From IMG/VR virus record IMGVR_UViG_3300027541_000009, positions 186,001 through 250,000 of that record: a stretch of 64,000 bases of DNA. The stretch is one strand, 5' to 3'. Below are positions 34,766 through 49,893 of this stretch, piece by piece. Numbering within the stretch: position 1 is the stretch's first letter; every line of letters begins with the position of its first letter. The notes below the pieces were generated by a model. The model ran no database searches and was not told where the DNA came from. It saw only the letters and a list, made by a program, of their open reading frames with translations. A program made the position numbers and the translations under genes.

Positions 34766-34793
34766 TTGACAACCCTCTTTTTTATGCTATACT
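34766..34793 (+). promoter_or_regulatory. sigma70-type promoter of dam overlapping an upstream terminator; probably leaderless mRNA
   Basis: TTGACA-16 nt-TATACT (extended TG), ATG 7 nt downstream; GGGGGTT-GAC-AACCCTC-T6 hairpin. Confidence 0.7.
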
Positions 34794-34799
34794 TATCCA

Positions 34800-35651
34800 A
34801 TGAACAAAACTTTTCTTAAATGGGCTGGCAATAAAACAAGAGTTCTGCCCCATCTTATTCCCCATATTGGTTATCCAAAGCGTTATTGTGAACCCTTTGG
34901 TGGTAGTCTTGCTGTTGCTTTGAATACACCAGCACAGCAATATATCCTCAACGATGTGAATAAGGATTTGGTAGCAATCTATCAGAATTTGGTAAATCCA
35001 AATGATGATAGTTTCATTCAATACTGCGAAGAACTATTCACGCCAGAGAATAATACAAGAGAAGTATATTTGGAGTTGCGAGAGCACTTCAATCAAGCAA
35101 CAGATACTACAGAGAGAGCAAGGTTATTCATTTATTTGAATAAGCACTGTTTTAATGGACTATCAAGATATAATAGCAAAGGAATGTTTAATGTTCCTTA
35201 TGGTAGAGAAGTTGTAAATAAGGATACTGGGGAGAAAGAAATACAAAGTGCTTACTTTCCCAGAGAGGAAATGATGAACTTCAGGATGTATTTCTTATCC
35301 AAACAATTGGTGAGGTTCACATCACTTTCTTTTGAAGATTCATCTCTGTATGAGGATTTGGAAGCAGGTGATGTTGTCTACTTTGACCCACCGTATGTTC
35401 CTGCATCAAATACTGCAAATTTCACAAGTTATGCGACTGATGGATTTACTTCTGACCAACAAGTTCAGTTAGCACAACTTGCAGAATCTCTTTCATCTAA
35501 AGGTATCAAAGTGATTGTATCAAATCACGATGTTCCTATTACAAGAGAACTCTACAAAAATGCTACAATCTATCAAATTCAAGTAACTAGAACGATTGCT
35601 GCAAAAGGCGGCAGTAGGAAAAAAGCAAGTGAACTCATAGCAGTTTACTAA
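34800..35651 (+). CDS. dam: DNA adenine methyltransferase (Dam/D12 class)
   Basis: LKWAGNK, YCEPFGGS, LNDVN, YLNKHCFNGL.RYN..G.FNVPYG, VVYFDPPY, SNHD motifs. Confidence 0.93.
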   Translation: MNKTFLKWAGNKTRVLPHLIPHIGYPKRYCEPFGGSLAVALNTPAQQYILNDVNKDLVAIYQNLVNPNDDSFIQYCEELFTPENNTREVYLELREHFNQATDTTERARLFIYLNKHCFNGLSRYNSKGMFNVPYGREVVNKDTGEKEIQSAYFPREEMMNFRMYFLSKQLVRFTSLSFEDSSLYEDLEAGDVVYFDPPYVPASNTANFTSYATDGFTSDQQVQLAQLAESLSSKGIKVIVSNHDVPITRELYKNATIYQIQVTRTIAAKGGSRKKASELIAVY

Positions 35652-35697
35652 CTTGGATCCTCTAAAGTGTACCTATAATGTAAGCAACAAACTTGAA

Positions 35698-36111
35698 ATG
35701 TCCACCCGAGCACGAATCGGTCTTGAACTTAAGAATGGTTCTATTCTCTCTGTGTATCACCACTGGGATGGTTATCCTGAATGGTTGGGTCGTATCCTGA
35801 ACACTCATTACAACACTCGTCAGAAAGTTGCTGACTTGATTGATGGTGGTGATATGTCTTGCTGCTGGACTGATGACCGCTGGAATGATAGTGCAGTGAA
35901 GGGTGTTTATGGACCCAACTATTATTCTTATCGTAACGATGATTGTCCTCCTCGTCTTGATGCTGATTTGTGTGAGTATCTTCTGCCTGCTAATGGTGAA
36001 GAGTATGCCTATGTCTTCCGCAACGGTGAATGGGTGTGCTACAATATGAATTGTTATGAACAAAAACTTCCTGAAGTGATTGAAATCCCCTCTGCTGCGC
36101 TTGCTGTTTAA
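35698..36111 (+). CDS. Hypothetical protein (MSTRARIG..SVYHHWDGYP family)
   Basis: Widespread phage family motif YxHWDGYP...EEYAY; follows repeat copy 1. Confidence 0.8.
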   Translation: MSTRARIGLELKNGSILSVYHHWDGYPEWLGRILNTHYNTRQKVADLIDGGDMSCCWTDDRWNDSAVKGVYGPNYYSYRNDDCPPRLDADLCEYLLPANGEEYAYVFRNGEWVCYNMNCYEQKLPEVIEIPSAALAV

Positions 36112-36128
36112 TTCTTAGGTAAATTATT

Positions 36129-36536
36129 ATGAAACAACAAAACGGATTTATTGACCCTGCTGTTGCTGCTATTGCTGTCGGTGTGGTTGTGATTGGTGGT
36201 CTCATCTTTATTGGTGGTCCACAATATAATGTGTGGCAGCAATCTCTTGCTGGTAAAGCAGAGTTGCAAAAAGCAGAATACACTCGTCAGGTAGCAGTTC
36301 TTGAAGCACAAGCAAAGAAAGATAGTGCTCAACAACTTGCTGATGCTGAAATCATCCGTGCTACTGGTGTTGCTAAGGCAAACCAAATCATTGGTGATAG
36401 TCTGAAGGACAACCGTGAGTATCTTCAGTATCTTTACATTACTGGTCTTGAAGAAGGATCTAACAAAGGTAATGTGACCATCTATGTTCCCACCGAAGGT
36501 GGTATGCCTGTTCCTACTCTTCAAATGAGCAAATGA
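36129..36536 (+). CDS. Membrane-anchored SPFH/HflK-like coiled-coil protein
   Basis: TM helix, then AEIIRA.GVAKANQIIGDSL...YLQYL..YVPTE.GMP. Confidence 0.7.
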   Translation: MKQQNGFIDPAVAAIAVGVVVIGGLIFIGGPQYNVWQQSLAGKAELQKAEYTRQVAVLEAQAKKDSAQQLADAEIIRATGVAKANQIIGDSLKDNREYLQYLYITGLEEGSNKGNVTIYVPTEGGMPVPTLQMSK

Positions 36537-37019
36537 ACAAAAAGTACATTGTTGTTGGATTGATTGGTTTTGCAGTTATTCTTGGTTGGAATGTCTTTCT
36601 AATCCAGCGTGATGACAAAATGTATGATGCTTACTATCGCTCTAAGGCAATAGAGAATCTCAAGAAACCACCCTCTATAGAAATCAGATGAGTATTGTAC
36701 TCGGTGTAGCAATCTACGCAGCACTGGTTGCATTTGTATCCTCCATTATGCTATATTACTTAAAGGTAATGTATTCACGCGAAGAAGCAAAACTTAAGGA
36801 GAAATCCAAATGATCCCCAAACGACTCCGTGACCTTATTAAACAAGCAGAAATGGACAAAGTAGCAGAAGAGTTCTGGAAAGAAGTTGAGCGTGAAGCAG
36901 CGAAACTTGAGGTAACTGTTGACTACTATCTCGCTGAGTTTTACTAATGACTTTTATTCTTGGTATGGGAATCGGTATTCTTTTGACTGTAGGAGTTTCT
37001 TTTATAGTTGCTTCCGACA

Positions 37020-37048
37020 TTGACAATAACGACAACTAATCTTAAACT
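37020..37048 (+). promoter_or_regulatory. sigma70-type promoter
   Basis: TTGACA-17 nt-TAAACT. Confidence 0.65.
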
Positions 37049-37071
37049 TAAGAGGTAATTTACAAAGACAA

Positions 37072-37314
37072 ATGGCACAAAAGTTTCTTTACATCGTTGA
37101 CCACTACATTCCTTTTCCGTCCAGTGAATACGGTGGACTTTGGAATGTGATTGCGGAAAACGACAATGAATGTTTTGATTTGATTTCTGCAGAAGATTCT
37201 GACAATTTTTATGAGCAACACTATACTACTCTTCGTGAAAATGTGTTAAGCGCGAGGACTTATGCGCTTGCTGAGGATGTAGAATCTGCAGTAGTTGAAT
37301 CTTTTACAACCTGA
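37072..37314 (+). CDS. Hypothetical protein (VDH.IPFPSSEYGG)
   Basis: 80 aa after promoter. Confidence 0.7.
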   Translation: MAQKFLYIVDHYIPFPSSEYGGLWNVIAENDNECFDLISAEDSDNFYEQHYTTLRENVLSARTYALAEDVESAVVESFTT

Positions 37315-37470
37315 TGACTCACCACGTTACTCACACCAATAAAATGGTGTTTGATTTGAAGAAACAGTACCAAGAACGTATTGAACAACTGCAAAGTAAA
37401 ATTGCAGAACAAGAACACGAAATCTCACAACTGCAGAAACAAATTGAGTATATGTCGCGTGACAAGTTCT

Positions 37471-37752
37471 ATGATTGCTGAGTTTCCGCATAAAGCACCC
37501 GAAAATTATTATTATGAGTTCGAAGAGTTCAAGCGTGGAGTTATTGCTATATGGTTGTATTGCAATCGTAAGTTTGATTACAATAATGGTGCTCCCACAA
37601 GGACAATCTGGGGATTCTACAAATCCAAGACCAGAGAATACTTTGCCCCAATCAATAGTAAGACAGTTGGTGCTCGTGTAAATATCAACGACACGCGAAA
37701 CTATTCAGCAATGCCTATCAAGCAGTCTCCATTGGATGCGTTCTTTGTATGA
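37471..37752 (+). CDS. Hypothetical protein
   Basis: ATGA-coupled start 37471. Confidence 0.7.
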   Translation: MIAEFPHKAPENYYYEFEEFKRGVIAIWLYCNRKFDYNNGAPTRTIWGFYKSKTREYFAPINSKTVGARVNINDTRNYSAMPIKQSPLDAFFV

Positions 37753-38012
37753 CATACAAACCACAAGTCAATGATTATGTTGAATGGACAAAAGGTGTTG
37801 AAGGTTGGGTTTATTTTAGGGATGACGAATATGTTACGATTGAGTATGTTGTTCGTCCTAAAGACCAAGTAAACTATCACGCCTGCCCCATTCACGCAAA
37901 TGAAAGATTGCTTGTTGTTTGTTATAAAGAAGATTGGAAACATTTAAAGTATGTTAAATCAAGAAAATCAAGATATGAAGAAGAACAGAACTGTCTGGCG
38001 ATTGCTTGCTAA
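37749..38012 (+). CDS. Hypothetical protein
   Basis: ATGA-coupled. Confidence 0.65.
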   Translation: MTYKPQVNDYVEWTKGVEGWVYFRDDEYVTIEYVVRPKDQVNYHACPIHANERLLVVCYKEDWKHLKYVKSRKSRYEEEQNCLAIAC

Positions 38013-38241
38013 GGCACTTGGAGAAAAAGCAAGTAAATGTGATAAAGAAGCGGATAAGGTAGCACTTATCCGCCTTTTGATGTTTTTGAGCATTTTTATT
38101 ACCAACTGCTTCATTATCGCTAATGCAATTCGACATTGGAATGATGAGACTAAGATAGAAGTATTTGTTGAAACTTCTAGTATGCCAGAATATCAAACTC
38201 CACCTATGAGAGTTGCAAATAAACCCCTTGAGTTTGAGTAA
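37975..38241 (+). CDS. Hypothetical membrane protein (WR..AKALGEK..IRHW)
   Basis: TM segment. Confidence 0.65.
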   Translation: MKKNRTVWRLLAKALGEKASKCDKEADKVALIRLLMFLSIFITNCFIIANAIRHWNDETKIEVFVETSSMPEYQTPPMRVANKPLEFE

Positions 38242-38270
38242 CAATAAATAACTAAAAAGTTATTCATAAG

Positions 38271-38915
38271 ATGGACGCTCAAGACATTCGCAATCTTCAA
38301 GAAGCATATATGGAAGTTGTTGAAAACCAGCAACTTGATGAGATGCCATATCAAGTAATGGGTTCTCCTGATGGAAAGAAAGAGAAGAAGATTGGTAAAC
38401 CAGTAAAGAGTAGAAAGTATGCTGACGCAAGAGCAGCAGAACTTGAAGATACTCATAAAAAAACAGGTGGCAAATATCGTTCACAATATGTTGAGGATTA
38501 TGACCTATACGACATCATTCTTTCGCACCTTCTTGATGAAGGATATGCTGATACTGAACAAGCAGCAACGGCAATTATGGGGAATATGAGTGAAGAGTGG
38601 AGAGAGAGTATTATGATTGCTGAAGGAATGACTATGAAGGACTTCAAGGCAAATCGTCAGAAGAATAAGAGGAGATCTGCTTCTGCTGATGCTGAGAAGA
38701 GAGGTCATGTAGGTAAGGAATGGTATAACAGTGGTAGAAGATATTCTCCAGATGAAGCAAAGAGAAGTCGTGCAAATATGGATGATGAAGAAAGACGCAC
38801 GAGACATCGTAGTGCTGTAGATCCTGATAATGAGGATGATAATAACTACTCTGCAGATAAGACGAAGAATCCTAAGAAACTTCGTAAGCAAAAAGCAATG
38901 GGAGAATTAGGATAA
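38271..38915 (+). CDS. Late, highly charged protein; candidate internal head protein
   Basis: ATAAATA promoter at about 38244; LQEAY and LDE prohead-protease-like sites. Confidence 0.65.
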   Translation: MDAQDIRNLQEAYMEVVENQQLDEMPYQVMGSPDGKKEKKIGKPVKSRKYADARAAELEDTHKKTGGKYRSQYVEDYDLYDIILSHLLDEGYADTEQAATAIMGNMSEEWRESIMIAEGMTMKDFKANRQKNKRRSASADAEKRGHVGKEWYNSGRRYSPDEAKRSRANMDDEERRTRHRSAVDPDNEDDNNYSADKTKNPKKLRKQKAMGELG

Positions 38916-38916
38916 A

Positions 38917-39165
38917 ATGCTAACATTTAGAGAGTTCTACGAAATCTGCGAAGCAAAAAGACCAGACACTCCACCTCAAGCAGTTCCTGGAACTTACAAG
39001 AGGAGTGATACTGGTGTGCAAACTTATACTCTTCAAAGATATGAAGGTCCAGAAGGGAAACCAACAAAGAAAGAAGTTAATAAGTTAATTGTAAAGCGTA
39101 GTGGCGGAAAAGAAGTAACAAAGAGACTGAAAAAGTTAGCAAAATCTGTTAAAAAAATTGATTGA
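38917..39165 (+). CDS. Candidate internal head protein
   Basis: MLTFREFYEICEA N-terminus resembling T4 capsid-targeting sequence; basic body. Confidence 0.6.
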   Translation: MLTFREFYEICEAKRPDTPPQAVPGTYKRSDTGVQTYTLQRYEGPEGKPTKKEVNKLIVKRSGGKEVTKRLKKLAKSVKKID

Positions 39166-39205
39166 TTTTTACTTGGATCCTCTAAAGTGTACCTATAATG
39201 TAAGC

Positions 39206-39352
39206 ATGAAACAAATTATGGACTGCTTCGATGACATTCAAATTGAAGAATCTAATGGATTTGATTTTATTGAAAAAGATCTAACTGAACTCATTGAAGA
39301 ATCTAACGACTTCAATCTTAATGAGTATCTTAACTCCAACTATGATTACTGA
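39206..39352 (+). CDS. Small acidic hypothetical protein
   Basis: Follows repeat copy 2. Confidence 0.55.
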   Translation: MKQIMDCFDDIQIEESNGFDFIEKDLTELIEESNDFNLNEYLNSNYDY

Positions 39353-39412
39353 CAGTTTCTAAACTGTCCACCAAATCACCCACACAGAACACTTTTCCTT
39401 TATTATTCTCAA

Positions 39413-39613
39413 ATGACTGAACACATCCCCAACGTGCTCCCTCACATTCAAGAACTGAAAGATGCTTGGCGTCGTCAAGATTTTATCTTTACTAAGCAGC
39501 AACAAGAAGAATATGATTTGCTTCTTGCTACTCGCCGCGAACGTGTAAAGCAATTCTATACTGAAGGACGAGTATTCAAGGGTTCATATAAAGCAAAGGA
39601 AGTAGAGTTCTAA
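39413..39613 (+). CDS. Hypothetical protein
   Basis: ATG just after class-2 -10. Confidence 0.7.
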   Translation: MTEHIPNVLPHIQELKDAWRRQDFIFTKQQQEEYDLLLATRRERVKQFYTEGRVFKGSYKAKEVEF

Positions 39614-39640
39614 ATACTAAAAAGTAGTGTTTAGATAACA

Positions 39641-40249: not shown

Positions 40250-40308
40250 TACTTACTTGGATCCTCTAAAGTGTCCCTATAGTATAAGCACTCAAACGAA
40301 ACAACATT

Positions 40309-40464
40309 ATGCTCTGGCAAGACCGCAACGGTAACTGGTTCAGCACTGTTTCTCCTATCGACATGAAAATTGAGCGAGCAATGATTGAAGCAAACGCTAA
40401 CAAAGTCTGGGAAGAAAAAGAGCGTTCTGGTGATTGGTTGTTTGATGAAATGTTTGGCGGTTGA
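40309..40464 (+). CDS. Hypothetical protein (51 aa)
   Basis: Read manually, between repeat copy 3 and a class-2 promoter. Confidence 0.6.
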   Translation: MLWQDRNGNWFSTVSPIDMKIERAMIEANANKVWEEKERSGDWLFDEMFGG

Positions 40465-40554
40465 TTAACTGTCCGCCAGCACCCTTTCCAAGCGTCAGGA
40501 AGGGTGCTATAATGTCTTTTAGATACCAAACCACCTGAAACTCTGTAATTCGTA

Positions 40555-41742
40555 ATGATTCCTCATCTGATCAATCTTCGTCCTCACCAAGAACGCGGAG
40601 TTGCTGCTATGCAACAGCATGATAAAGGTCAAGTCATTGTTCCTACTGGTGGTGGCAAGACTCTGAAGATGATCTATGATTGTCTGCGTGAGTTGCAGTC
40701 ACAAACTCCCCAGACCATTGTTGTTGTTGCTCCGCGTATTCTTCTGGCAGAGCAACTGTCTTCGGAGTTCCTGGAGTTTATCACTAACGCTGCTGTTTTC
40801 CATGTTCACAGTGGCGAAACTCATCACGAGTCTTCTACTCGCCCTCAAGAGATTCGCAACTGGGTTGATGCTAATGCCGACAATCATCGCCTGATTGTAA
40901 CCACCTACAACTCTCTGTCGCGTCTTCAAGTGGCAGAAGTTGATGTGGATACCATTTACTTTGACGAGGCACATAATTCTGTTCAGCGTCACTTTTTCCC
41001 TGCAACTGAGCACTTTGCTGCTAATGCACGCCGCTGCTACTTCTTCACTGCTACCAGGAAGACTTCGCTCACTCCTTCTAAACCTGGAATGAACGATCGT
41101 GATGTCTATGGAGATATTATTTGCCGCGTTTCTGCTCCTGAACTTGTTGATGGAGGATACATTATTGCTCCTAAGATTGTAGCGAAGAAGTTTGATGTAC
41201 TTGCACCAAAGCAGGTAACTGCTGAATGTGACAGTAGCAATCTGATGGACACTCTGGAGGATATTGATTGCAAGAAAATCCTGGTATGTGTTAAGTCTGC
41301 GAAGCAACTTATCAACCTGATGTCTCATACTGACTGTGCTTCCCAACTAAATCAGCGTGGTTATTCTTACCTCTACATCACCTCAAAAACTGGAGCGATT
41401 ATTGATGGTAAGAAAGTCAATCGTGAAGTATTCTTTGACACGCTCAATTCTTGGGGTCGTGACCCTAACAAGAAGTTTGTTTGCTTCCATCGCTCTATTT
41501 TGAGCGAAGGAATTAATGTCAGCGAACTAGAGGCGGTCGTCTTTCTTCGCAATATGGATGTGATTGAAATGACCCAAACTATTGGTCGGGTTCTTCGCCT
41601 TGGCGGCAAAGAAAAGGTCTTCGGTCTCTGTGTGGTGCCTGTATATTCCAAAGTTGGAGTATCTACAGAGCGAGCACTCCAGCGAGTTGTTGATGCTGTG
41701 TTTGAGAAGGGTGAGATGGTTGATAGTGTAGTGCGGCGGTGA
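40555..41742 (+). CDS. Superfamily 2 (DEAH; ResIII-like) helicase
   Basis: LRPHQ, PTGGGKT, VVAPRILL.EQ, FDEAH, FTAT, LSEGIN, QTIGRVLR. Confidence 0.9.
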   Translation: MIPHLINLRPHQERGVAAMQQHDKGQVIVPTGGGKTLKMIYDCLRELQSQTPQTIVVVAPRILLAEQLSSEFLEFITNAAVFHVHSGETHHESSTRPQEIRNWVDANADNHRLIVTTYNSLSRLQVAEVDVDTIYFDEAHNSVQRHFFPATEHFAANARRCYFFTATRKTSLTPSKPGMNDRDVYGDIICRVSAPELVDGGYIIAPKIVAKKFDVLAPKQVTAECDSSNLMDTLEDIDCKKILVCVKSAKQLINLMSHTDCASQLNQRGYSYLYITSKTGAIIDGKKVNREVFFDTLNSWGRDPNKKFVCFHRSILSEGINVSELEAVVFLRNMDVIEMTQTIGRVLRLGGKEKVFGLCVVPVYSKVGVSTERALQRVVDAVFEKGEMVDSVVRR

Positions 41743-41855
41743 GTCTCGCCTAAGAACCCAGTCACAGTCAGGGGTCAAAACCTGATTTTTCTTCAATTCT
41801 ACTGCAGCGGTGTCATAGGTCATCCACTGCAACCAAATTCCTGATTTTTACTAAA
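41743..41855. repeat. Copy 1 of duplicated ~110-bp intergenic element
   Basis: 38-bp identical core (41786-41823) with 47971-48008, similar flanks. Confidence 0.85.
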
Positions 41856-41869
41856 GTATAGATTTTACC

Positions 41870-42565
41870 ATGGATTTCGTTGAGTTCGTTCCTGCTTACA
41901 ACCGAATTAAAGCAAAAGGTTTCATAAAGTCTCATCGCAAAGGTGATACTGGAGTTGGTCATACTTTTGAACAAGAACTTGGTTTGACTGAGAATTGTAT
42001 CTCTGGTCCAGATATTGATGGAAAAGAGTTGAAAGCAGCAAGGAAAGGTGCTGGTGGAAAACAAACTCTCTTTACAAAGGAAGGTGAATGGCAGATACCT
42101 CAATTAAAGTTCCTAGAAACTTTTGGATTTCCTCACACAAAACACATTGGGGAATTGTCTGGACAATCTACTGTGACAAGAACCAAAAACAACAGAGGAT
42201 TTTGGATTCATACTGATGATGAATATGTTTCCATAAAGCACGAAGAACTGGAGATTGTTAGGTGGGATTGGGATTCACTTATTAAACAGTTTGCTCACAA
42301 ATTTCCATCTTGTGTTAAAGTATTTGCCGATGTTGAAGTTCGTAATGGTATAGAGTATTTTCACTACAATGAAGCGTATGTCTACATTTCTATTGATAAA
42401 AATCTGTTTCGTAAGGCAATCGAAGATGATGTAATTTCTATTGACTTACGACTGAGAACCCAGTATAATGTTGGCACTGGTAAGGGTGTTCGCAATCGTG
42501 GCACTTGCTTTCGTATAAATCACTCAAATATGGATAAATTGTTTGTAAAAGAGGTTCTTGAATGA
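41870..42565 (+). CDS. MvaI/BcnI-family restriction endonuclease
   Basis: GDTGVGHTFEQELGL.EN....PD..G.ELKA..TLFTK and C-terminal IDLR....RNRGT.FRI. Confidence 0.8.
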   Translation: MDFVEFVPAYNRIKAKGFIKSHRKGDTGVGHTFEQELGLTENCISGPDIDGKELKAARKGAGGKQTLFTKEGEWQIPQLKFLETFGFPHTKHIGELSGQSTVTRTKNNRGFWIHTDDEYVSIKHEELEIVRWDWDSLIKQFAHKFPSCVKVFADVEVRNGIEYFHYNEAYVYISIDKNLFRKAIEDDVISIDLRLRTQYNVGTGKGVRNRGTCFRINHSNMDKLFVKEVLE

Positions 42566-43425
42566 AGGATGTTATTCTTTATGGTGACTGCCGCTCAACT
42601 CTTAAACATTTTGTAGACGCTGGTGTAAAAGCACAAATGTGTGTGACCTCTCCACCATACTACGGTCTGCGTGATTACGGTAACGAAGATAATCAAATTG
42701 GTTTAGAAGAGTCGCCTGAAGAGTTTATCTCCCAACTGGTAGAGGTGTTTCGCGGTGTGCGTGATGTTCTTACAGATGATGGCACATTGTGGGTTAACAT
42801 TGGTGATTCTTATTACAACTATCGTTCTGGTAAAGGTCAGACACTACCTAAGCAATCTGTGGCATCTAACAACCAAGATTTGCCACAAATACGAAATCCT
42901 AGAAGAGGAAATAAACTTGAGGGTCTAAAGGATAAAGATTTGATTGGTATTCCTTGGATGCTAGCATTTGCTTTGCGTGCAGATGGTTGGTATCTACGAC
43001 AGGATATTATTTGGAGCAAACCAAATCCAATGCCCGAAAGTATGAAAGATCGATGTACCAAATCTCACGAATATATCTTCCTCTTATCTAAGAGCAAGAA
43101 CTATTATTTTGATGTTGATTCGATTAAAGAACCCACTGTAGATGGCAAGGAATTAAAACGGAAACGTAGTGTATGGGAAGTAACAACTAAACCATACAAA
43201 GGTTCTCACTTTGCAGTTTATCCTCCAGAACTTATTGAACCTTGTATTATTGCTGGTTCTCGTGAAGGTGACACTATTCTTGACCCATTTATGGGTAGTG
43301 GGACTACTGCTGCTGTTGCCAAATCTTTGGGAAGGAATTATGTTGGATGCGAACTTCACGAGGAGTATGGTAAATTGATTGAAAAGAGAGTTAGTGAAAC
43401 TGTTGGTCTTACCAAGTTTATGTAA
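42562..43425 (+). CDS. N4-cytosine/N6-adenine DNA methyltransferase (beta class)
   Basis: VTSPPY catalytic motif before DPFMGSGTT SAM motif; ATGA overlap with the endonuclease. Confidence 0.92.
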   Translation: MKDVILYGDCRSTLKHFVDAGVKAQMCVTSPPYYGLRDYGNEDNQIGLEESPEEFISQLVEVFRGVRDVLTDDGTLWVNIGDSYYNYRSGKGQTLPKQSVASNNQDLPQIRNPRRGNKLEGLKDKDLIGIPWMLAFALRADGWYLRQDIIWSKPNPMPESMKDRCTKSHEYIFLLSKSKNYYFDVDSIKEPTVDGKELKRKRSVWEVTTKPYKGSHFAVYPPELIEPCIIAGSREGDTILDPFMGSGTTAAVAKSLGRNYVGCELHEEYGKLIEKRVSETVGLTKFM

Positions 43426-43427
43426 CG

Positions 43428-43607: not shown

Positions 43608-43654
43608 ACTTGGATCCTCTAAAGTGTACCTATAGTGTAAGACGCATTTACCCT

Positions 43655-43897: not shown

Positions 43898-43965
43898 AAA
43901 CTGACACAGGAGCACTTGCAATTTAGCAAGTGCTCCTTTATTGTACCTTTGTTCGTAAAACTTCA

Positions 43966-44169: not shown

Positions 44170-44207
44170 TTGATTGAAACTTGGATCCTCGAAAGTGTAC
44201 CTATAGT

Positions 44208-45125
44208 ATGAGTAAGCAACCAATGCAAAATAAGCACCTTGAGCACCCTGAAGATGAAATCCTGACGGGTAATCTATCTGTTCTTGATTGGTTCTCTGAG
44301 GTTGATAGTTTTATCAGCGTCAAGATGGATGGTGCTCCTGCTATTGTTTGGGGCACTAATCCTGAGAATGGTAAGTTTTTTGTCTGCACCAAAGCAGCAT
44401 TTAACAAGCAAAAGATTCGCCTTTGCTATAACGAAGATGACATCTTTACTCATTTTGGTGGACAACCAAGGGTAGCACAAATCCTCATCTTCTGTCTGGA
44501 TTATCTTCCTCGCACTAACAATGTGTATCAGGGAGATTGGATTGGTTTCGGTAAAGGGTTGGATACATTCACGCCCAACACGATTACCTATCGTTTTCCT
44601 GAAGTTGTGCGTCAAGAGATTATCGTTGCTCCACATACTTACTACACTGGTGAGCGTCTGCCTGAAATGGTAGCACATCCTATCACTAGCAAGTTTGCAA
44701 GCACAAAGAAATGTTTGTTTGTGCAACCTGCTGTGTCGCTGAATCCTTATCGTGAAGATTTGGAGGATGTGTGTAACTTTGCTAAACAAATGAGCACTCT
44801 GTGTGAGTTTGTGAGCGACAAGAAAGCATCACAAATCAAAAAAGAGATTAACGCTTGCATCCGAGAGCAACGCACCATCCGTGAGGATGAAATTGCAGAA
44901 AAATGCGATTGTGACATCAACCTCATCAGATTGTGGAAGTTGGTGAAGTCTATCAAGGATGATTTGTTCCTGTTCATTCATGAAGAGGATGACATTGAAT
45001 GTTTCCTCTGGGATGTTGCAGGTTTCCACGAGGGTTATGTCATTCATAACAAGTTTGGGTCTTACAAAGTAGTTGATCGTGAGGTATTCTCTCATGCCAA
45101 CTTCACAATCGCAAAGAGTTGGTAA
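44208..45125 (+). CDS. KxDG-motif (ligase/nucleotidyltransferase-like) phage protein
   Basis: N.HLEHPED, SVKMDGAPAIVWG, YQGD, EGYV, YKVVDR..FS..NF; resembles covalent nucleotidyltransferase motifs I, IV and V. Confidence 0.6.
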   Translation: MSKQPMQNKHLEHPEDEILTGNLSVLDWFSEVDSFISVKMDGAPAIVWGTNPENGKFFVCTKAAFNKQKIRLCYNEDDIFTHFGGQPRVAQILIFCLDYLPRTNNVYQGDWIGFGKGLDTFTPNTITYRFPEVVRQEIIVAPHTYYTGERLPEMVAHPITSKFASTKKCLFVQPAVSLNPYREDLEDVCNFAKQMSTLCEFVSDKKASQIKKEINACIREQRTIREDEIAEKCDCDINLIRLWKLVKSIKDDLFLFIHEEDDIECFLWDVAGFHEGYVIHNKFGSYKVVDREVFSHANFTIAKSW

Positions 45126-45153
45126 CTTGGATCCTCGAAAGTGTACCTATAGT

Positions 45154-45585
45154 ATGAGCACTCCTACGATGCAAGCACAAGCACAACAAACTATTGCAGA
45201 GAATGTGTATAAGAACACTCTGCTGCTGATTGAAGCACTGAAAGACAACTATCGTCAGTATTCTATTCGCGGTCACCAAAAGTTCGTGAATGATGCTGAT
45301 AATCAAGAGTATCATCAGCGCAAGATTGATGAACTCAAGTCTGGCAAGTGTGACATTGATTATACTGTTGAGACTGGCAAAAAGTATCACAAAGTCATTC
45401 TGGTGAATGGTGGTGGATCGAGATCGGTTCACTGTTTTATCGACAAGCAAAATGGAGGCGTTTTCAAGTCAGCGTCGTGGCGTAGTCCTGCAAAGGGTGA
45501 GCGATACAATCTCTTGTTAATTAAGGACCGTGAATGGTTGTTTGAGAACGCAGATTGGTCGTCCGGATATCTTTACAAAAGGTGA
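45154..45585 (+). CDS. Hypothetical protein (GKKY.K..SVHCFID..G.V.K.ASW..PAK family)
   Basis: ATG supplied by repeat copy 6. Confidence 0.75.
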   Translation: MSTPTMQAQAQQTIAENVYKNTLLLIEALKDNYRQYSIRGHQKFVNDADNQEYHQRKIDELKSGKCDIDYTVETGKKYHKVILVNGGGSRSVHCFIDKQNGGVFKSASWRSPAKGERYNLLLIKDREWLFENADWSSGYLYKR

Positions 45586-46074
45586 TTATTGCAAATAGTA
45601 ACCTTTGGACTTTTTCCCTTTATAAAGGTCTCCCCTATCAATTTTATGTTCTCTACAAAACTTTCCAAGATTAAAAACTTCTACTATTTCTCCAGTTGGT
45701 GTTACTAACCGATGAACTTTTGCTAATGCCAACTCCGTGTTTTTTTGATTACTGCACCACTCAAGATTACTGACATTGTTGTTTGTTTTTACGCCATCAA
45801 TGTGATTAACTTGAGGGAGATTATTTGGATTTGGAATGTAAGTTTCTGCGACCAAACGATGAACTTTTTTTAACTTCTGTCCTTCTTCCGTTTTAATCCA
45901 AACAGTCAAGTATCCCTTGCAATGATTATTAAATCTTCTTTTTTTTGGTTCTTTATCCAATACTACTCCCCACCCATCTCTTCCACGATTGCGCCAGTAT
46001 GACCAAACTTCACCGTTTTCTGTGATAAAATAACCTTTATGTTCTGGGTGTTCTTTCATCTTTAATACCTGCAT
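45586..46074 (-). CDS. HNH homing endonuclease
   Basis: VHRLVAETYIPNPNNLPQVNHIDGVKTNNNVSNLEW; minus-strand TATAAATA at about 46085-46092. Confidence 0.9.
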   Translation of the reverse strand: MQVLKMKEHPEHKGYFITENGEVWSYWRNRGRDGWGVVLDKEPKKRRFNNHCKGYLTVWIKTEEGQKLKKVHRLVAETYIPNPNNLPQVNHIDGVKTNNNVSNLEWCSNQKNTELALAKVHRLVTPTGEIVEVFNLGKFCREHKIDRGDLYKGKKSKGYYLQ

Positions 46075-46109
46075 ACTGTGTTATTATTTATAACCTATCT
46101 GTACGCAAA

Positions 46110-46334
46110 ATGAACTACCTTTGTTTTGTTGATGGTTTGCTAGAATACGCTAGTTCAGACCCTTCTTCTTTCGCTCACTATCAGTTAGTGTATGCTGAAG
46201 AGCACAAAAATGCTAATGTTCAGTATCTTACTCTGACTGACGAAGAGTATGACGAAATGTTCCCTTATGAGGAGGATGAACAACCTTACCTTGATGGTTG
46301 GGAAGATTCGATTTTTGATGGAAATGAAGAATGA
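46110..46334 (+). CDS. Hypothetical acidic protein
   Basis: 74 aa. Confidence 0.65.
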   Translation: MNYLCFVDGLLEYASSDPSSFAHYQLVYAEEHKNANVQYLTLTDEEYDEMFPYEEDEQPYLDGWEDSIFDGNEE

Positions 46335-46588
46335 GCACAATCCCTGACACTGAAATGACTTATGATGAACAAATCAAAGAAATGACTGTCACAAAGTCTC
46401 TCAAACTTTTGCGTGATGGGTTCAAGAACGAACTTGCCACTGCTCTATTCGCAGATGAGCGCACAACTGAACTCTTTGCCCAACTGATTAGTGAGTTTGT
46501 AGAGACAAACATTCCTGTGGTTGATGATGAGAACCAGATGGAACTTTCTATGATGCTGTTGGAAACTCTTGACATTGTAGCACGATGA
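46331..46588 (+). CDS. Hypothetical protein
   Basis: ATGA-coupled. Confidence 0.65.
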   Translation: MSTIPDTEMTYDEQIKEMTVTKSLKLLRDGFKNELATALFADERTTELFAQLISEFVETNIPVVDDENQMELSMMLLETLDIVAR

Positions 46589-46839
46589 CTTACTCTAACC
46601 TTTCAAAGATTCGCCCCAAACTTCGCACACAAGGAAACATTACAGGCAACTTCGGAAAACCCAAATCTAAGGGAGGTTCTACACTCAATGACATCGGTGG
46701 TAATGGTAACATAGGTGCGACACAGAATGAATACTTGAATCGTCTCTATTATGCTTTTGATAACACTACCGACTCTAAACTTCGTCACTTCATTTATACT
46801 GAAATCAAAAAGATTCTCATTCAACAAGGAAAGTGGTGA
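46585..46839 (+). CDS. Hypothetical protein
   Basis: ATGA-coupled. Confidence 0.7.
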   Translation: MTYSNLSKIRPKLRTQGNITGNFGKPKSKGGSTLNDIGGNGNIGATQNEYLNRLYYAFDNTTDSKLRHFIYTEIKKILIQQGKW

Positions 46840-46877
46840 GTGATTCTTACTTGGATCCTCTAAAGTGTACCTATAGT

Positions 46878-47120
46878 ATGAGCACAACCACTGAAATGGA
46901 TCAAGTCTTTCACTATGTCACCAACTGGAAAGAAGGTAAGGTGATGCAAATGTTCATTCAACAAATCACCCCTGAGTATCAAGAATGTGACCACAAATAT
47001 GTTGCTATTGCTCTCAATCCTGTAACTAACAAGAGCATGGTAATGTCTAATCCTCGCAGTCATTATGATACTCTCCAGTGGGTTCGTAAGTTCTGTGGTT
47101 CTTTCTCTCTTCTGTACTGA
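46878..47120 (+). CDS. Hypothetical protein
   Basis: ATG supplied by repeat copy 7. Confidence 0.65.
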   Translation: MSTTTEMDQVFHYVTNWKEGKVMQMFIQQITPEYQECDHKYVAIALNPVTNKSMVMSNPRSHYDTLQWVRKFCGSFSLLY

Positions 47121-47292
47121 TTATGAACAACTATCGACTCTTGATTGAGTATAAAGTCCCCAACAGTGCAGAGACTTACTATGAAGAAAGGTTCATCAAG
47201 TCTCGTTCATCTTGTGGTAAAATCGCTGATGATTACCTAGCACAAGACCGCACAAATCTTATCCGCTCTGTTGAAGTTACCCCTGTTTAATT

Positions 47293-47562
47293 ATGTACCG
47301 CACTCTTTCTGAACTTCGTGACTCTATCAACCAAATGATTGAGAGTCAAGGTGAGAACGCTCCCTGTGCTGCGTTTGTATTCACTCAACACGATGTCGTT
47401 GAGTTTGATGGTGAGGACAATCAAGAGAAGTATTTTTCTTCTCTTTTCACTCAAGATGTGCTCGCTGATGTAGGCGGTTCCGACTACATTTACGAACAGA
47501 TTGGTGAGGTGATTGATGATTCAATCCGTGACCGTAAGCAAATGTCCATCTACGCTAACTGA
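47293..47562 (+). CDS. Hypothetical protein
   Basis: 89 aa. Confidence 0.7.
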   Translation: MYRTLSELRDSINQMIESQGENAPCAAFVFTQHDVVEFDGEDNQEKYFSSLFTQDVLADVGGSDYIYEQIGEVIDDSIRDRKQMSIYAN

Positions 47563-47722
47563 TTATGACTAACAAAACACAACTTTTTGAGTTTCTGTAT
47601 GAAACTTGCAAAAAGAATAATGGTGTCTTAGAAGATACTTTGCGTAACTACATTGACTCCTTAGATGAGGTGGAACTTTGCGAACTTGAGGATTTTCTTG
47701 TCAACAACTTTGGAGATGATTG

Positions 47723-47917
47723 ATGACTGACGGTTACACTTTCAATCGCGTTAATTTTACTCCTAATGAGGAAAGTTGTATTCTTAAGTTTCTCAATCAA
47801 GCACGAGAATGTGGGTATCCTAGTGCAAACGAAGAATGGTATCCTGTGATCGATTCTATCTTCCAAAAATTCTTTAACTCTAACTTGAAAGAGGCACAAG
47901 AGTGGCAAACCCTGTGA
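47723..47917 (+). CDS. Hypothetical protein
   Basis: TGATG-coupled. Confidence 0.6.
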   Translation: MTDGYTFNRVNFTPNEESCILKFLNQARECGYPSANEEWYPVIDSIFQKFFNSNLKEAQEWQTL

Positions 47918-47928
47918 TTCTCACTTGT

Positions 47929-48041
47929 GTCTCACTGAGAACCCAGTCCACCACTGAAGCAAAAACCTGTTTTTTCTTCAATTCTACTGCAGCGGTGTCA
48001 TAGGTCATTCACTGCAGGGAAATCCTCAATTTTTTCTAAAA
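47929..48041. repeat. Copy 2 of duplicated ~110-bp intergenic element
   Basis: See copy 1 at 41743. Confidence 0.85.
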
Positions 48042-48054
48042 TACAAACAAACAC

Positions 48055-48198
48055 ATGAAGTACATCGTTGAACTCTACGTTGGTGGCAAAGTCTTCAAAG
48101 AAGAAGTGCAAGCAACCAACCCAAAAGATGCCCGTGAGACTGCACTGGCACGAAATCCTCACGCAAAAGTTGTTGCGGTCAATGTAAGTTTTCGTTGA
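48055..48198 (+). CDS. Hypothetical protein (MKYIVELYVGGKVF..A.NP.A family)
   Basis: 47 aa, read manually; its TGA lies in the left extension of repeat copy 8. Confidence 0.65.
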   Translation: MKYIVELYVGGKVFKEEVQATNPKDARETALARNPHAKVVAVNVSFR

Positions 48199-48232
48199 TT
48201 CTAACTTGGATCCTCTAAAGTGTACCTATAGT

Positions 48233-48403
48233 ATGAGCAACACTTTCACCGTCCGTTTCGTATCCGATGCTCTGGATTCTCCCGAGTATATTGGACCTTT
48301 CTACACTGAAGATGACGCCCAAGACTATTGCGATGCCCGCAACGGTTCGCTATCACTTTCTGGGATTCCTTCCTGGGTTGCCTGTTACTCTGTCGTTGAC
48401 TGA
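48233..48403 (+). CDS. Hypothetical protein (YIGPF motif)
   Basis: Only in-frame ATG is at the repeat's right edge. Confidence 0.6.
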   Translation: MSNTFTVRFVSDALDSPEYIGPFYTEDDAQDYCDARNGSLSLSGIPSWVACYSVVD

Positions 48404-48540
48404 TTAGTAATGCGAATTGCTTTCCTGATTGCTACTATTGCACTTGGTTTTAAAGTTGCAATTCCTGCTTATGCGACGGTGAATGAGTATCAAGAACGCC
48501 AAGCAGATCAGTTCTGCCAAATTGACCCTAACTACTGCAA

Positions 48541-48783
48541 ATGATGCAATTCCAAGTTACTGAAATCGCTTTTGATTTTGATGATGAATGTCCGTATTGT
48601 GGCGAGAATCAATCTCCAGAACACGATGCAGAATGTGATGGATTCTTGGAGTTTGATTATGCCACTCAAGCAACAATCGGTCAAATCTGGGAGGCAGATG
48701 ATGAAGAAGATTTAGTAGAAGAGATTACAACTGCCTACGGTTGGTGTATCAAATCCATTGATTATCGCCACATCTTGAAATGA
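48541..48783 (+). CDS. Hypothetical protein (WEADDEEDLVEEIT..GWCI)
   Basis: 80 aa. Confidence 0.65.
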   Translation: MMQFQVTEIAFDFDDECPYCGENQSPEHDAECDGFLEFDYATQATIGQIWEADDEEDLVEEITTAYGWCIKSIDYRHILK

Positions 48784-48809
48784 TTTCCCTCCCTAACTTC
48801 ACAAACAAA

Positions 48810-49034
48810 ATGACACTTACTCAAGACCAATACGATAAACTGCTTGCACTCTACATTGAGTCGATTGTTGATGGTATGGACCTCGACAGTTTGGTACAAT
48901 TTGCAAGCGATACGATTGAAGAGAATCTCCGCGAAACTTGCTCACTTCCAGAAGAGTTAATCGAAGAGATTTCACGACTCTATGATGAGGATTATGTGAA
49001 CGATTTGGTGGAAAGTGTAACACAAGAAAGTTGA
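48810..49034 (+). CDS. Hypothetical protein (IVDGMD..L)
   Basis: Acidic; stop lies in repeat extension. Confidence 0.65.
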   Translation: MTLTQDQYDKLLALYIESIVDGMDLDSLVQFASDTIEENLRETCSLPEELIEEISRLYDEDYVNDLVESVTQES

Positions 49035-49085
49035 TAGCAACTTGGATCCTCTAAAGTGTACCTATAGTATCACCGCAATTCCACA

Positions 49086-49676
49086 ATGTCCAAACTTACC
49101 ACTTTGCAGGTATCTGCCAAACTGAATGTAACTGATTTCAGTGCATTTGATAAACCTGGCAAGAACAAAGGTGCTCGCGGGCAACTGTTAGAAATTGTCC
49201 TTGGAGTTCCTAACTCTTCTGACCTCAAAGATTTGGAGGATGGAGAGATTAAGACTTTTACAGTTGGTGAATCTATTGCTGCCACACAGTTGAAGCATTG
49301 TCTATCTGAAATCATTGAAGATTCTGTGTCTTTTGATGATAGTAAGGTTGGACAGAAACTGAAGCAAACTGTATATGTTGGATTCACCCGTGAGAACGAT
49401 TATGTAGGTTCTGTTGTACTGAATGAGGAAACTCATCCCGAACACTATCAGGAACTGCGTGAGGATTATGAGTTCATTTGTGAGCAGATTCGCCGTGCAT
49501 TTGATATTGAAAGCGAACTGAATACAATCACTGGACCTAACGGATTGCTGCAGATTCGCACCAAAGCATCTAAAACTAACGGTCGCTATGTTCCTCTCCG
49601 TTTCGCAGGTGTGACGCTTAAGGATAAAGGAATGGCATTTTATTTGTGTGGTTCATTCGGTCGCAATCTTTTCTGA
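49086..49676 (+). CDS. MutH/Sau3AI-like PD-(D/E)xK endonuclease
   Basis: NKG..GQLLE..LG...S....D...GEIKT N-terminus and LQIRTKAS...AFYL C-terminus typical of the MutH/Sau3AI fold. Confidence 0.75.
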   Translation: MSKLTTLQVSAKLNVTDFSAFDKPGKNKGARGQLLEIVLGVPNSSDLKDLEDGEIKTFTVGESIAATQLKHCLSEIIEDSVSFDDSKVGQKLKQTVYVGFTRENDYVGSVVLNEETHPEHYQELREDYEFICEQIRRAFDIESELNTITGPNGLLQIRTKASKTNGRYVPLRFAGVTLKDKGMAFYLCGSFGRNLF

Positions 49677-49710
49677 TAGCAACTTGGATCCTCTAAAGTG
49701 TACCTATAGT

Positions 49711-49893
49711 ATGACTAACACCTCTTTCGACTTCCAAACCGACATCACTCCTGCACTTCTGGAGTTCATGTGCAACAATCACACAGATTTGAATGATTGT
49801 GTAGATTTCGTTTGCAATGTCTTTGACCTTGATGCAACTGACGAACTGATTGATTATGTTGCTGATGAGTTCGACGCTTTCTTCGGCAACTGA
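49711..49893 (+). CDS. Hypothetical acidic protein
   Basis: ATG at repeat copy 10. Confidence 0.6.
   Translation: MTNTSFDFQTDITPALLEFMCNNHTDLNDCVDFVCNVFDLDATDELIDYVADEFDAFFGN

What the first reader, a model, noticed from the sequence alone, without database searches (positions are those of the whole stretch)
34766..49712. Possible GATC-methylation switch: Dam, a GATC in every repeat's -35 box, and a MutH/Sau3AI-like nuclease
Seen in sequence: all 14 repeats keep GGATCC, so a GATC overlaps the putative -35 hexamer. The dam stop codon overlaps the first repeat, so dam heads the array. A MutH/Sau3AI-fold nuclease lies inside the array. Established: Dam-family enzymes typically methylate GATC; MutH nicks unmethylated GATC strands and Sau3AI cuts GATC; GATC methylation in -35 regions controls promoters such as dnaAp2. 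Inference: methylation state (packaged, fully methylated DNA versus newly replicated hemimethylated DNA) could switch all these early promoters together, or nicking at the repeat GATC could target recombination between repeats. The nuclease specificity is unknown.
Basis: inference. Interest (0 to 1): 0.75.

Follow-up and report, generated by a model that had tools for sequence, protein, structure and literature searches.

The report
Phage promoter repeats plus Dam-MutH pair
A T4-like cyanophage carries 14 copies of an early-promoter repeat that happen to contain GATC, plus a separate GATC methylase and MutH-like nuclease pair that probably marks phage DNA as self. Close relatives show the promoter GATC is not needed, so the proposed methylation switch is not supported.

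Summary
There are 14 near-identical intergenic repeats, all on the + strand, and each contains GGATCC. A Dam-family methylase ends right at the first copy. The ORF at 49086-49676 has a MutH/Sau3AI fold with an intact catalytic D..E-x-K.

Relatives whose Dam is 80-89% identical carry the same promoter family at the same positions, but with CTCACC, GGGCCC, GAGCC or GGGGCC where this phage has GGATCC. The GATC lies in a 6-7 nt block that is uniform within a genome and variable between genomes. That block does not follow the Dam tree.

What is conserved is a link between Dam and the nuclease:
- All 25 cultured cyanophage records with the nuclease also have Dam.
- The two genes are adjacent in eight phages and fused in one.
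- The three genomes with both genes are GATC-depleted (0.16-0.51 of expectation), against 0.83-0.85 in two relatives that lack both.
- Picocyanobacterial hosts mostly lack a GATC methylase and are GATC-rich.

The best reading is early-promoter cassettes plus an independent restriction-modification-like GATC module. A lineage-specific effect of methylation on these promoters remains possible but has no support here.

The parts
34760..34793 (+). GC stem-loop that contains a canonical sigma-70-like promoter (TTGACA, 16 nt, TATACT with TG) just upstream of dam. It is a different promoter type from the repeats.
34800..35651 (+). dam: a Dam-family N6-adenine DNA methyltransferase, predicted to be GATC-specific
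   Evidence: PF02086 E 6e-60. TIGR00571 scores 257.6 bits against a cut-off of 114.85. EcoDam 2g1p matches at E 9e-67 over the full length, with FLKWAG-K, NGL-R, NVP-GR and DPPY conserved.
35652..35681 (+). Repeat 1 (-10 reads TATAAT), abutting the dam stop. The next ATG ORF is 35698-36111.
39172..39201 (+). Repeat 2 (-10 reads TATAAT)
40256..40285 (+). Repeat 3, upstream of a small ORF and the helicase (40555-41742)
43609..43638 (+). Repeat 4
44180..44209 (+). Repeat 5, upstream of the DUF6267 gene (to 45125)
45126..45155 (+). Repeat 6, upstream of the phrog_818 gene (to 45585)
46850..46879 (+). Repeat 7
48205..48234 (+). Repeat 8
49041..49070 (+). Repeat 9, the promoter of the nuclease gene. 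The ATG lies 17 nt after the -10.
49086..49676 (+). MutH/Sau3AI-fold PD-(D/E)XK nuclease of 196 aa. Catalytic residues are D49, E54, K56 and K91. The LQIR-K and F185-Y186 motifs shared with MutH are conserved.
49683..49712 (+). Repeat 10
50125..50154 (+). Repeat 11
50649..50678 (+). Repeat 12
50887..50916 (+). Repeat 13
53771..53800 (+). Repeat 14, the last copy, outside the finding's range
40555..41742 (+). DEAD/ResIII helicase. In S-RIM8-type relatives it directly follows the dam and nuclease pair.

Best explanation
Two separate things lie side by side here.

(1) The 14 repeats are the early-promoter cassettes of the plastic early region of a T4-like cyanomyovirus. Each sits between the stop of one small gene and the start of the next and points the same way as the genes. 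Each carries a -10 (TATAGT or TATAAT), an invariant AAAGTGTnCC spacer, and an A at the predicted start 7 nt after the -10. The GATC lies in a 6-7 nt block at about -31 to -25, which covers the end of the -35 hexamer and the start of the spacer. This is the least constrained part of the promoter. The block is kept uniform within a genome, probably by gene conversion or cassette spread, and it differs between genomes. GATC is therefore a lineage-specific passenger, not a conserved control element.

(2) dam and the 49086 gene form a GATC modification and nuclease module of the restriction-modification kind. Dam methylates phage GATC sites. The MutH-like enzyme nicks or cuts GATC sites that lack the methyl group. 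These would be in the DNA of picocyanobacterial hosts, which lack GATC methylation and are rich in GATC, or in the DNA of co-infecting dam-less phages. The phage genome lowers its own risk by shedding GATC sites.

Shown by analysis here: the anatomy, the folds, the conserved residues, the co-occurrence, adjacency and fusion, the GATC depletion, and the variability of the block.

Inferred: promoter activity, the GATC specificity and methyl sensitivity of the nuclease, and its target (host or competitor DNA).
For: Promoter cassettes:
- There are 14 copies, all on the + strand, against 0 expected, and none elsewhere in the genome.
- Each copy lies 0-25 nt upstream of an ATG ORF, with the upstream gene's stop about 10 nt before it.
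- The repeats have no significant RNA structure, with z from -0.2 to -1.0.
- The same promoter family occupies the syntenic early region of S-SM2 and SynMITS9220M01.
- S-RIM8-type phages have a canonical TTGACC, 17 nt, CATACT promoter at the orthologous positions.

The variable block:
- 140 unique promoter instances fall into at least 11 block variants around an invariant AAAGTGTnCCTATAGT. Only 54 of the 140 carry GATC.
- dam-bearing relatives have the block without GATC.
- The Dam tree interleaves the variants. L058, with 8 of 8 CTCACC, is sister to L061 with GGATCG at 100/99 support.

Dam:
- It is closest to EcoDam, DpnM and T4 Dam, all GATC enzymes.

Nuclease:
- The model has pLDDT 95.4.
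- The best structural matches are MutH-DNA complexes, with probability 1.0 and TM 0.68, followed by Sau3AI.
- The profile matches MutH at E 2.5e-16.
- D49, K56 and K91 are invariant and position 54 is E or D in 56 of 56 sequences. Y186 aligns with MutH Tyr212, the residue that senses methylation (PMC3848065).

Dam-nuclease linkage:
- The nuclease occurs in 25 phage records, and all of them have Dam. Dam occurs in 64 cyanophage records.
- dam and the nuclease gene are about 80 nt apart in S-RIM8, KBS-M-1A, WH25-B, S-RS29, S-H25, S-IOM18, QB2 and S-M1.
- They form a single 493-codon ORF in S-8S29.

Site avoidance:
- Whole-genome GATC observed/expected is 0.51 here, 0.16 in S-RIM8 and 0.27 in S-8S29. 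It is 0.85 in S-SM2 and 0.83 in SynMITS9220M01, which lack both genes.

Host side:
- The phage psbA is closest to Synechococcus and Cyanobium.
- None of the 4 nearest genomes has a D12 methylase, and only about 6 of 101 in that family have a near-full-length one.
- The GATC methylase DmtA is reported absent from picocyanobacteria (PMC4390886), and mutH from all cyanobacteria (PMC5101192).
- Host-like contigs hold 7.6-8.4 GATC per kb at observed/expected 1.0, against 2.0 per kb in the phage.
Against: - No transcription start, methylation or cleavage data exist for this phage. The metatranscriptome contigs simply break at the repeats and give no 5' ends.
- The repeats do not meet a simple sigma-70 consensus, because the -35 is weak.
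- In this genome dam and the nuclease are 13.4 kb apart, not adjacent.
- Several other 4-nt palindromes are as depleted as GATC here (GGCC 0.27, ACGT 0.27). GATC avoidance in this genome alone is therefore not specific. The argument rests on comparing only five genomes.
- Canonical MutH is nearly inactive without MutL, and nothing shows that this enzyme is autonomous.
- Non-promoter GATC in the early region is at 0.2-0.3 of expectation (20 observed against 69-97 expected), while each promoter keeps one. This is a weak hint that the promoter sites are tolerated or useful.
- Within the GATC-bearing variants the flanking bases changed 5 times and GATC never did. This is not significant (about 0.13 by chance).
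Confidence: 0.55

Rival explanations
1. Dam methylation of the GATC at about -30 to -27 changes RNA polymerase binding. Early promoters would then behave differently on fully methylated injected DNA than on hemimethylated or unmethylated replicated DNA, which would time early transcription.
For: - All 14 promoters carry the site.
- dam is an early-region gene at the head of the array.
- Four related variants keep GATC while their flanks change.
- The promoter GATCs persist in an early region where other GATCs are at 0.2-0.3 of expectation.
- Dam-sensitive promoters such as IS10 pIN and dnaAp2 are established (my own knowledge).
Against: - Dam-bearing relatives use the same promoter family without GATC, including directly after dam and in front of the nuclease gene.
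- The variants are interleaved on the Dam tree.
- The site lies in the least conserved part of the promoter.
- Conservation inside one genome is no stronger for GATC than for any other base of the core.
Confidence: 0.12
2. The MutH-like enzyme nicks unmethylated or hemimethylated GATC in the repeats. This stimulates recombination between copies, giving PeSL-like gene shuffling and homogenisation of the repeats.
For: - The repeats are homogenised within genomes, and arrays differ in gene content between relatives.
- T4-type promoter cassettes are reported to mediate modular shuffling (PMC4122927).
- The nuclease fold is that of a GATC nickase.
Against: - Homogenised arrays of the same family exist without GATC, and in genomes without dam or the nuclease (SynMITS9220M01 9 of 9, S-SM2). 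Neither GATC nor the nuclease is therefore needed for homogenisation.
- The other 404 GATC sites in the genome would be nicked as well.
Confidence: 0.07
3. Dam and the MutH-like protein give the phage its own methyl-directed mismatch repair, using the host's MutS and MutL.
For: - The pair is the same as the E. coli Dam and MutH pair.
- Hosts have MutS and often MutL (PMC5101192).
Against: - GATC is strongly depleted in genomes with the pair, down to 1 site per 1.6 kb in S-RIM8. That is the opposite of what strand discrimination needs.
- The protein scores 35 bits against the 243-bit MutH equivalog cut-off.
- From my own knowledge of MutL families, MutL in organisms that lack MutH is the endonuclease type, which is not known to activate MutH. 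Cyanobacteria lack mutH (PMC5101192).
Confidence: 0.1
4. dam is only an anti-restriction device against host enzymes that cut unmethylated GATC. The nuclease has another specificity and role, for example a homing or repair nuclease.
For: - Dam occurs without the nuclease in S-RIM50, S-RIM12 and ACG-2014b/g.
- GATC depletion is what host restriction would produce.
Against: - The nuclease never occurs without Dam (25 of 25).
- The two genes are adjacent in eight phages and fused in one.
- The MutH residues in the DNA-reading loops are conserved.
Confidence: 0.1

Closest known systems
E. coli Dam and MutH (methyl-directed mismatch repair)
   Same: The methylase is from the same family (EcoDam E 9e-67) and the nuclease has the same fold. 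The catalytic D..E-x-K plus K is conserved, as are the LQIR-K loop and the Tyr212-equivalent.
   Different: The pair is phage-borne. No MutS or MutL partner is encoded nearby. Hosts lack mutH and GATC methylation. The nuclease is shorter (196 aa) and scores far below the MutH equivalog cut-off. Genomes with the pair avoid GATC.
Sau3AI-type type II restriction-modification systems and 'MutH-like' R-M pairs (Flavobacteria, katablepharid mitochondrion, PMC8099122)
   Same: A MutH-fold nuclease is paired with a GATC methylase gene. The nuclease is never found without the methylase, and the carrier genome avoids the site.
   Different: From my own knowledge, Sau3AI has a second, allosteric domain and an m5C partner. 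Here the nuclease is a single domain and the partner is an m6A Dam. In this genome the two genes are 13.4 kb apart.
Chlorovirus R-M enzymes such as R.CviAI and M.CviAI (GATC) that degrade host DNA (my own knowledge)
   Same: A lytic virus of a phototroph encodes a GATC methylase plus a nuclease blocked by that methylation, in a host with unmethylated GATC.
   Different: The nuclease family is unrelated, and the role here is inferred, not shown.
T4-type early promoters and PeSL cassettes (PMC4122927)
   Same: Highly conserved promoter cassettes are repeated in front of small early genes in a plastic region next to the baseplate module. The sequence is lineage-specific.
   Different: No stem-loop accompanies the promoter here. 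The -35 is weak, and the conserved part is the spacer plus the -10.
Dam-controlled promoters (IS10 pIN, dnaAp2, pap, agn43; my own knowledge)
   Same: A GATC lies within the polymerase footprint of a promoter, in a genome that encodes Dam.
   Different: The GATC is not conserved in dam-bearing relatives. No regulator site or methylation data exist.

Membership tests
Dam (D12-class, GATC-specific m6A methyltransferase) | D12-class methyltransferase domain over the full length | tested here: met
   PF02086 E 6e-60, profile positions 1-253 of 253
Dam (D12-class, GATC-specific m6A methyltransferase) | Score above the curated Dam subfamily cut-off | tested here: met
   TIGR00571 scores 257.6 bits against 114.85. 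The E. coli equivalog model scores 258 against 441 and is not reached.
Dam (D12-class, GATC-specific m6A methyltransferase) | DPPY catalytic motif and the EcoDam GATC-contact residues (K9, N120, L122, R124, P134; the residue roles are from memory of the EcoDam-DNA structure) | tested here: met
   The alignment to 2g1p shows FLKWAG-K, F-NGL-S-R, NVP-GR and DPPY in register.
Dam (D12-class, GATC-specific m6A methyltransferase) | Methylates GATC | not testable with these tools
   This needs a methylome or a DpnI/MboI digest.
MutH (mismatch-repair endonuclease, orthologue) | Score above the MutH equivalog cut-off | tested here: not met
   NF003458 scores 35.3 bits against 243. TIGR02248 scores 23.8 against 229.9.
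MutH (mismatch-repair endonuclease, orthologue) | Works with MutL and MutS | not testable with these tools
   No mutL or mutS was seen among the ORFs annotated in this window. The rest of the genome was not searched for them.
MutH/Sau3AI-fold PD-(D/E)XK nucleases | Fold | tested here: met
   Model pLDDT is 95.4. Foldseek finds MutH 2aor with probability 1.0 and TM 0.68, and Sau3AI 4pxg with TM 0.62. The profile matches MutH at E 2.5e-16 and Sau3AI at 4e-5.
MutH/Sau3AI-fold PD-(D/E)XK nucleases | Catalytic D..(E/D)-x-K plus the second lysine | tested here: met
   D49, K56 and K91 are present in 56 of 56 sequences. Position 54 is E in 49 and D in 7. These align to MutH D70, E77, K79 and K116.
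MutH/Sau3AI-fold PD-(D/E)XK nucleases | GATC recognition with sensitivity to N6-methyladenine | tested here: inconclusive
   The LQIR-K loop and F185-Y186 (Tyr212-equivalent) are conserved. Linkage to Dam and GATC avoidance are indirect evidence. The protein-DNA complex job was not folded.
Type II restriction-modification system | Methylase and nuclease genes adjacent | tested here: inconclusive
   They are 13.4 kb apart in this genome (34800 and 49086). They are adjacent in eight cultured relatives and fused in S-8S29.
Type II restriction-modification system | The nuclease does not occur without the cognate methylase | tested here: met
   All 25 phage records with the nuclease have Dam, and Dam also occurs alone.
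Type II restriction-modification system | The carrier genome avoids the recognition site | tested here: met
   GATC observed/expected is 0.51, 0.16 and 0.27 in the three carriers and 0.85 and 0.83 in the two non-carriers. Only five genomes were compared.
Sigma-70-type (early) promoter | -10 hexamer with A at position 2 and T at position 6 | tested here: met
   TATAGT in 12 copies and TATAAT in 2
Sigma-70-type (early) promoter | -35 hexamer matching at least 4 of 6 at 16-18 nt | tested here: not met
   None of the 14 repeats is listed by the consensus scan.
Sigma-70-type (early) promoter | Mapped transcription start | tested here: inconclusive
   Metatranscriptome runs hold the region, but only as contigs that break at the repeats.
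PeSL (promoter-early plus stem-loop cassette) | Stem-loop joined to the promoter | tested here: not met
   There are no terminator-like hairpins at the repeats, and fold z-scores are -0.2 to -1.0.
Dam-methylation-controlled promoter | GATC in the promoter is conserved wherever Dam and the promoter co-occur | tested here: not met
   Relatives with dam carry CTCACC, GGGCCC, GAGCC or GGGGCC variants.
Dam-methylation-controlled promoter | Expression depends on methylation state | not testable with these tools
   This needs reporter or in vitro transcription assays.

The most novel reading that the evidence does not exclude
In this lineage the promoter GATCs are functional. Dam methylation, or nicking of newly replicated and not yet methylated copies by the MutH-like enzyme, would couple the shut-off of all 14 early promoters to replication. 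The nicks might alternatively serve as entry points for recombination or for clamp loading. In other lineages the lineage-specific block would be read by another factor.
Probability: 0.1. Interest if true: 0.7.

Novelty: new member of a known kind. Interest (0 to 1): 0.38.

Why it matters
T4-like cyanophages are a major cause of mortality in marine and estuarine picocyanobacteria. A phage-carried GATC methylase and MutH-like nuclease pair appears in several genera of these phages. It is matched by loss of GATC sites from the phage genome, in hosts that are GATC-rich and unmethylated. Such a pair would be a simple self versus non-self device for destroying host DNA or excluding rival phages. 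It could be tested directly with cultured phages such as S-RIM8. For the scan, the useful result is negative: uniformity of a motif across repeats within one genome is not evidence that the motif is functional. Relatives show that the GATC is dispensable.

Tried and rejected
- A single-sequence structure prediction of the nuclease failed, with pLDDT 32.6. It worked only with a 56-sequence alignment.
- Pfam and a direct PDB sequence search found nothing for the nuclease.
- A protein-DNA complex prediction with the repeat's GATC duplex was not folded by the tool. It is not evidence either way.
- Laying four metatranscriptome runs on 46000-51500 gave only assembly contigs that end at each repeat. 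There were no 5' ends and no proof of transcription.
I fetched the genomes as regions instead.
- I considered the repeats as structured RNAs or terminators and rejected this.
It is a separate R-M pair.
- Literature searches found no description of this promoter family or of a cyanophage Dam and MutH-like module in the held library.
- GATC depletion as a signal specific to this genome was rejected, because other palindromes are equally depleted.

Full report
**Source.** The window is the minus strand of positions 33918-97917 of a 204,829-b IMG/VR virus record, estimated 78% complete. Its genes place it among T4-like cyanomyoviruses. They include tail fibres, baseplate wedge, psbA and homing endonucleases, and the region is syntenic with S-SM2 and SynMITS9220M01. 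The phage psbA is closest to estuarine and freshwater Synechococcus and Cyanobium. The region also occurs in riverine metatranscriptome libraries.

**Observation.**
- A 30-nt core occurs 14 times with at most 2 mismatches, always on the + strand, against none in shuffles. It occurs nowhere else in the genome.
- Every copy has GGATCC, and 14 of the window's 15 GGATCC sites are in the repeats.
- dam (34800-35651) ends with TAA directly before the first core. No copy lies upstream of it.
First, all bases of the core are about equally invariant, so the GATC is not specially conserved within this genome. Second, the GATC lies 18 to 15 nt upstream of TATAGT. With a 17-nt spacer it touches only the last base of the -35 hexamer, and the consensus scan does not call these sites at all.

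**What the repeats are.**
- Each copy sits about 10 nt after the stop of the upstream gene and 0-25 nt before an ATG that opens the next ORF.
- It carries TATAGT or TATAAT, and an A lies 7 nt after the -10 in 12 of 14 copies.
- It shows no significant RNA fold and no attached hairpin.
- The same family (invariant AAAGTGTnCCTATAGT) fills the syntenic early region of cultured S-SM2 and SynMITS9220M01 and of many uncultured relatives. I found 140 unique instances.
- More distant relatives (S-RIM8 type) have a canonical TTGACC, 17 nt, CATACT promoter at orthologous positions.
- I therefore read the repeats as early-promoter cassettes. This is an inference, because transcript 5' ends could not be obtained.

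**The two enzymes.**
- Dam matches EcoDam over its full length (E 9e-67), then DpnM and T4 Dam. DPPY and the EcoDam GATC-contact positions are conserved. GATC specificity is very likely.
- The 196-aa protein has no Pfam hit and no direct PDB sequence hit.
- A profile of 56 homologues finds MutH at E 2.5e-16 and Sau3AI at 4e-5.
- A confident model (pLDDT 95.4) matches MutH-DNA complexes first, then Sau3AI, MvaI and BcnI.
- D49, E/D54, K56 and K91 are invariant. The LQIR-K loop and F185-Y186 are conserved, and these align with the MutH region holding Tyr212, the methylation sensor (PMC3848065).
- The protein is far below the MutH equivalog threshold. It belongs to the fold family but is not a MutH orthologue.

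**Test of the switch.**
- I fetched 62 loci around Dam homologues.
- Directly after the dam stop, relatives with Dam 80-89% identical read AGTTACTCACC (L058, L060, L065-L068, L084), AACTGGGCCC (L069-L073, L075) or ACTGAGCCCC (L074, L080-L083). L078 has CTGGGGGCC a few bases after its dam stop. In each case the conserved core follows.
- L058 has 8 of 8 promoters without GATC.
- The promoter in front of the orthologous nuclease gene lacks GATC in 6 of 9 promoter types.
- GATC variants (GGATCC here; GGATCG and TGATCG elsewhere) do exist in other dam-bearing contigs. On the Dam tree they are interleaved with non-GATC variants, and at least 2 to 4 changes are needed.
- Two complete dam-less genomes have non-GATC blocks. 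Arrays therefore stay homogeneous without dam, the nuclease or GATC.
- The GATC sits in a 6-7 nt block that is uniform within a genome and variable between genomes, in the least constrained part of the promoter.
- The switch is not a conserved feature. A lineage-specific effect cannot be excluded.

**What is conserved instead.**
- The nuclease occurs in 25 cultured cyanophage records, and all of them have Dam. Dam occurs in 64.
- In eight phages the two genes are about 80 nt apart, with dam first. In S-8S29 they form one 493-codon ORF.
- Whole-genome GATC is at 0.51 (this phage), 0.16 (S-RIM8) and 0.27 (S-8S29) of Markov expectation. It is at 0.85 and 0.83 in S-SM2 and SynMITS9220M01, which lack both genes.
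- Picocyanobacteria lack the cyanobacterial GATC methylase DmtA (PMC4390886) and mutH (PMC5101192).
- In my own search, none of the 4 genomes nearest by psbA had a D12 methylase, and only about 6 of 101 genomes of that family had a near-full-length one.
- Host-like contigs hold 7.6-8.4 GATC per kb, at expectation.
- MutH cuts hemimethylated and unmethylated GATC but hardly cuts fully methylated GATC (PMC3848065).
- Together this fits a restriction-modification-like module. Dam marks phage DNA, and the nuclease attacks unmethylated GATC in host or rival DNA. The carrier genome sheds GATC, as genomes with R-M systems do.

**Weak points.**
- There are no biochemical data.
- The gene pair is split by 13.4 kb in this genome.
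- Other palindromes are equally depleted here, and only five genomes were compared.
- MutH normally needs MutL for activity.
Non-promoter GATC in the early region is at 0.2-0.3 of expectation while each promoter keeps one. Among the four GATC variants only the flanks changed, which is not significant.

**Comparison and novelty.**
- The promoters resemble T4-type early-promoter cassettes (PMC4122927) but have no stem-loop.
- The gene pair combines the E. coli Dam and MutH proteins in the genetic logic of a Sau3AI-like R-M system. MutH-like R-M pairs are known in bacteria and in a protist mitochondrion (PMC8099122).
- It recalls the chlorovirus GATC R-M enzymes (my own knowledge).
- I found no description of the cyanophage module in the held literature.
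- I rate it a new member of a known kind and of moderate interest. The methylation switch as proposed scores low.

Noticed in passing
window 41870-43425: A second, complete type II R-M pair lies inside the promoter array. It comprises an MvaI/BcnI-family endonuclease (E 7e-39) and, overlapping it by 4 nt, an N4/N6 methyltransferase (PF01555, E 4e-57). CCWGG is only mildly depleted in the genome (173 observed, 244 expected).
   Followed up: partly
window 41777-41858 and 47962-48043: An 82-nt direct repeat with 87% identity. The first copy lies between the helicase and the MvaI/BcnI-like gene. It contains paired CTGCAG sites. Its function is unknown.
   Followed up: no
window 44208, 45154, 46878, 48233, 49711, 50153, 50677: Seven repeat copies read TATAGTATG. 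In all seven, that ATG is in frame with the downstream ORF. The other seven copies have ATA, ATC, GTG or ATG-TAA there. Several of the seven have a second in-frame ATG 15-18 nt after the -10, which is the more likely true start. This suggests that read-through transcripts expose the repeat to ribosomes.
   Followed up: partly
window 21488-30664: A 9.2-kb stretch of small ORFan genes has no GATC at all, where about 19 are expected at the genome's own density.
   Followed up: no
window 45586-46074 (-), 51992-53005 (-), 24744-25529 (+): Three homing-endonuclease-like genes: one HNH, one GIY-YIG and one matching phrog_314. The last has four internal 78-nt tandem repeats at 25042-25377.
   Followed up: no
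L047 3110-4588 (S-8S29, OQ504979.1 71201-72679): dam and the MutH-like gene are fused into one 493-codon ORF with a linker of about 26 aa. The dam stop codon seen in S-RIM8 is replaced by a sense codon.
   Followed up: yes
whole genomes of S-RIM8 (L115-L123), S-8S29 (L144-L152), S-SM2 (L124-L133): Some 4-nt palindromes are completely absent. S-RIM8 and S-8S29 have 0 CCGG in 171-173 kb, and S-SM2 has 0 CTAG in 191 kb. In the window's own genome GGCC and ACGT are at 0.27 of expectation.
   Followed up: partly
L048 3000-8800 (S-CAM7): A different early cassette, repeated 13 times: a GC-rich stem-loop followed by CTGCTACAATTGATTCATACCAAACAA. This is PeSL-like. S-CAM7 has dam and the nuclease 32 kb apart.
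   Followed up: partly
promoter family across loci L009-L114: The 6-7 nt block upstream of the conserved core is identical in all copies within a genome but differs between phages with 80-90% identical Dam, and it does not follow the Dam tree. This points to concerted evolution, or to a lineage-specific reader of that block.
   Followed up: partly
window 2722-2807 and 3120-3192: tRNA-Leu (taa) and tRNA-Thr (tgt) genes lie upstream of the tail-fibre genes.
   Followed up: no
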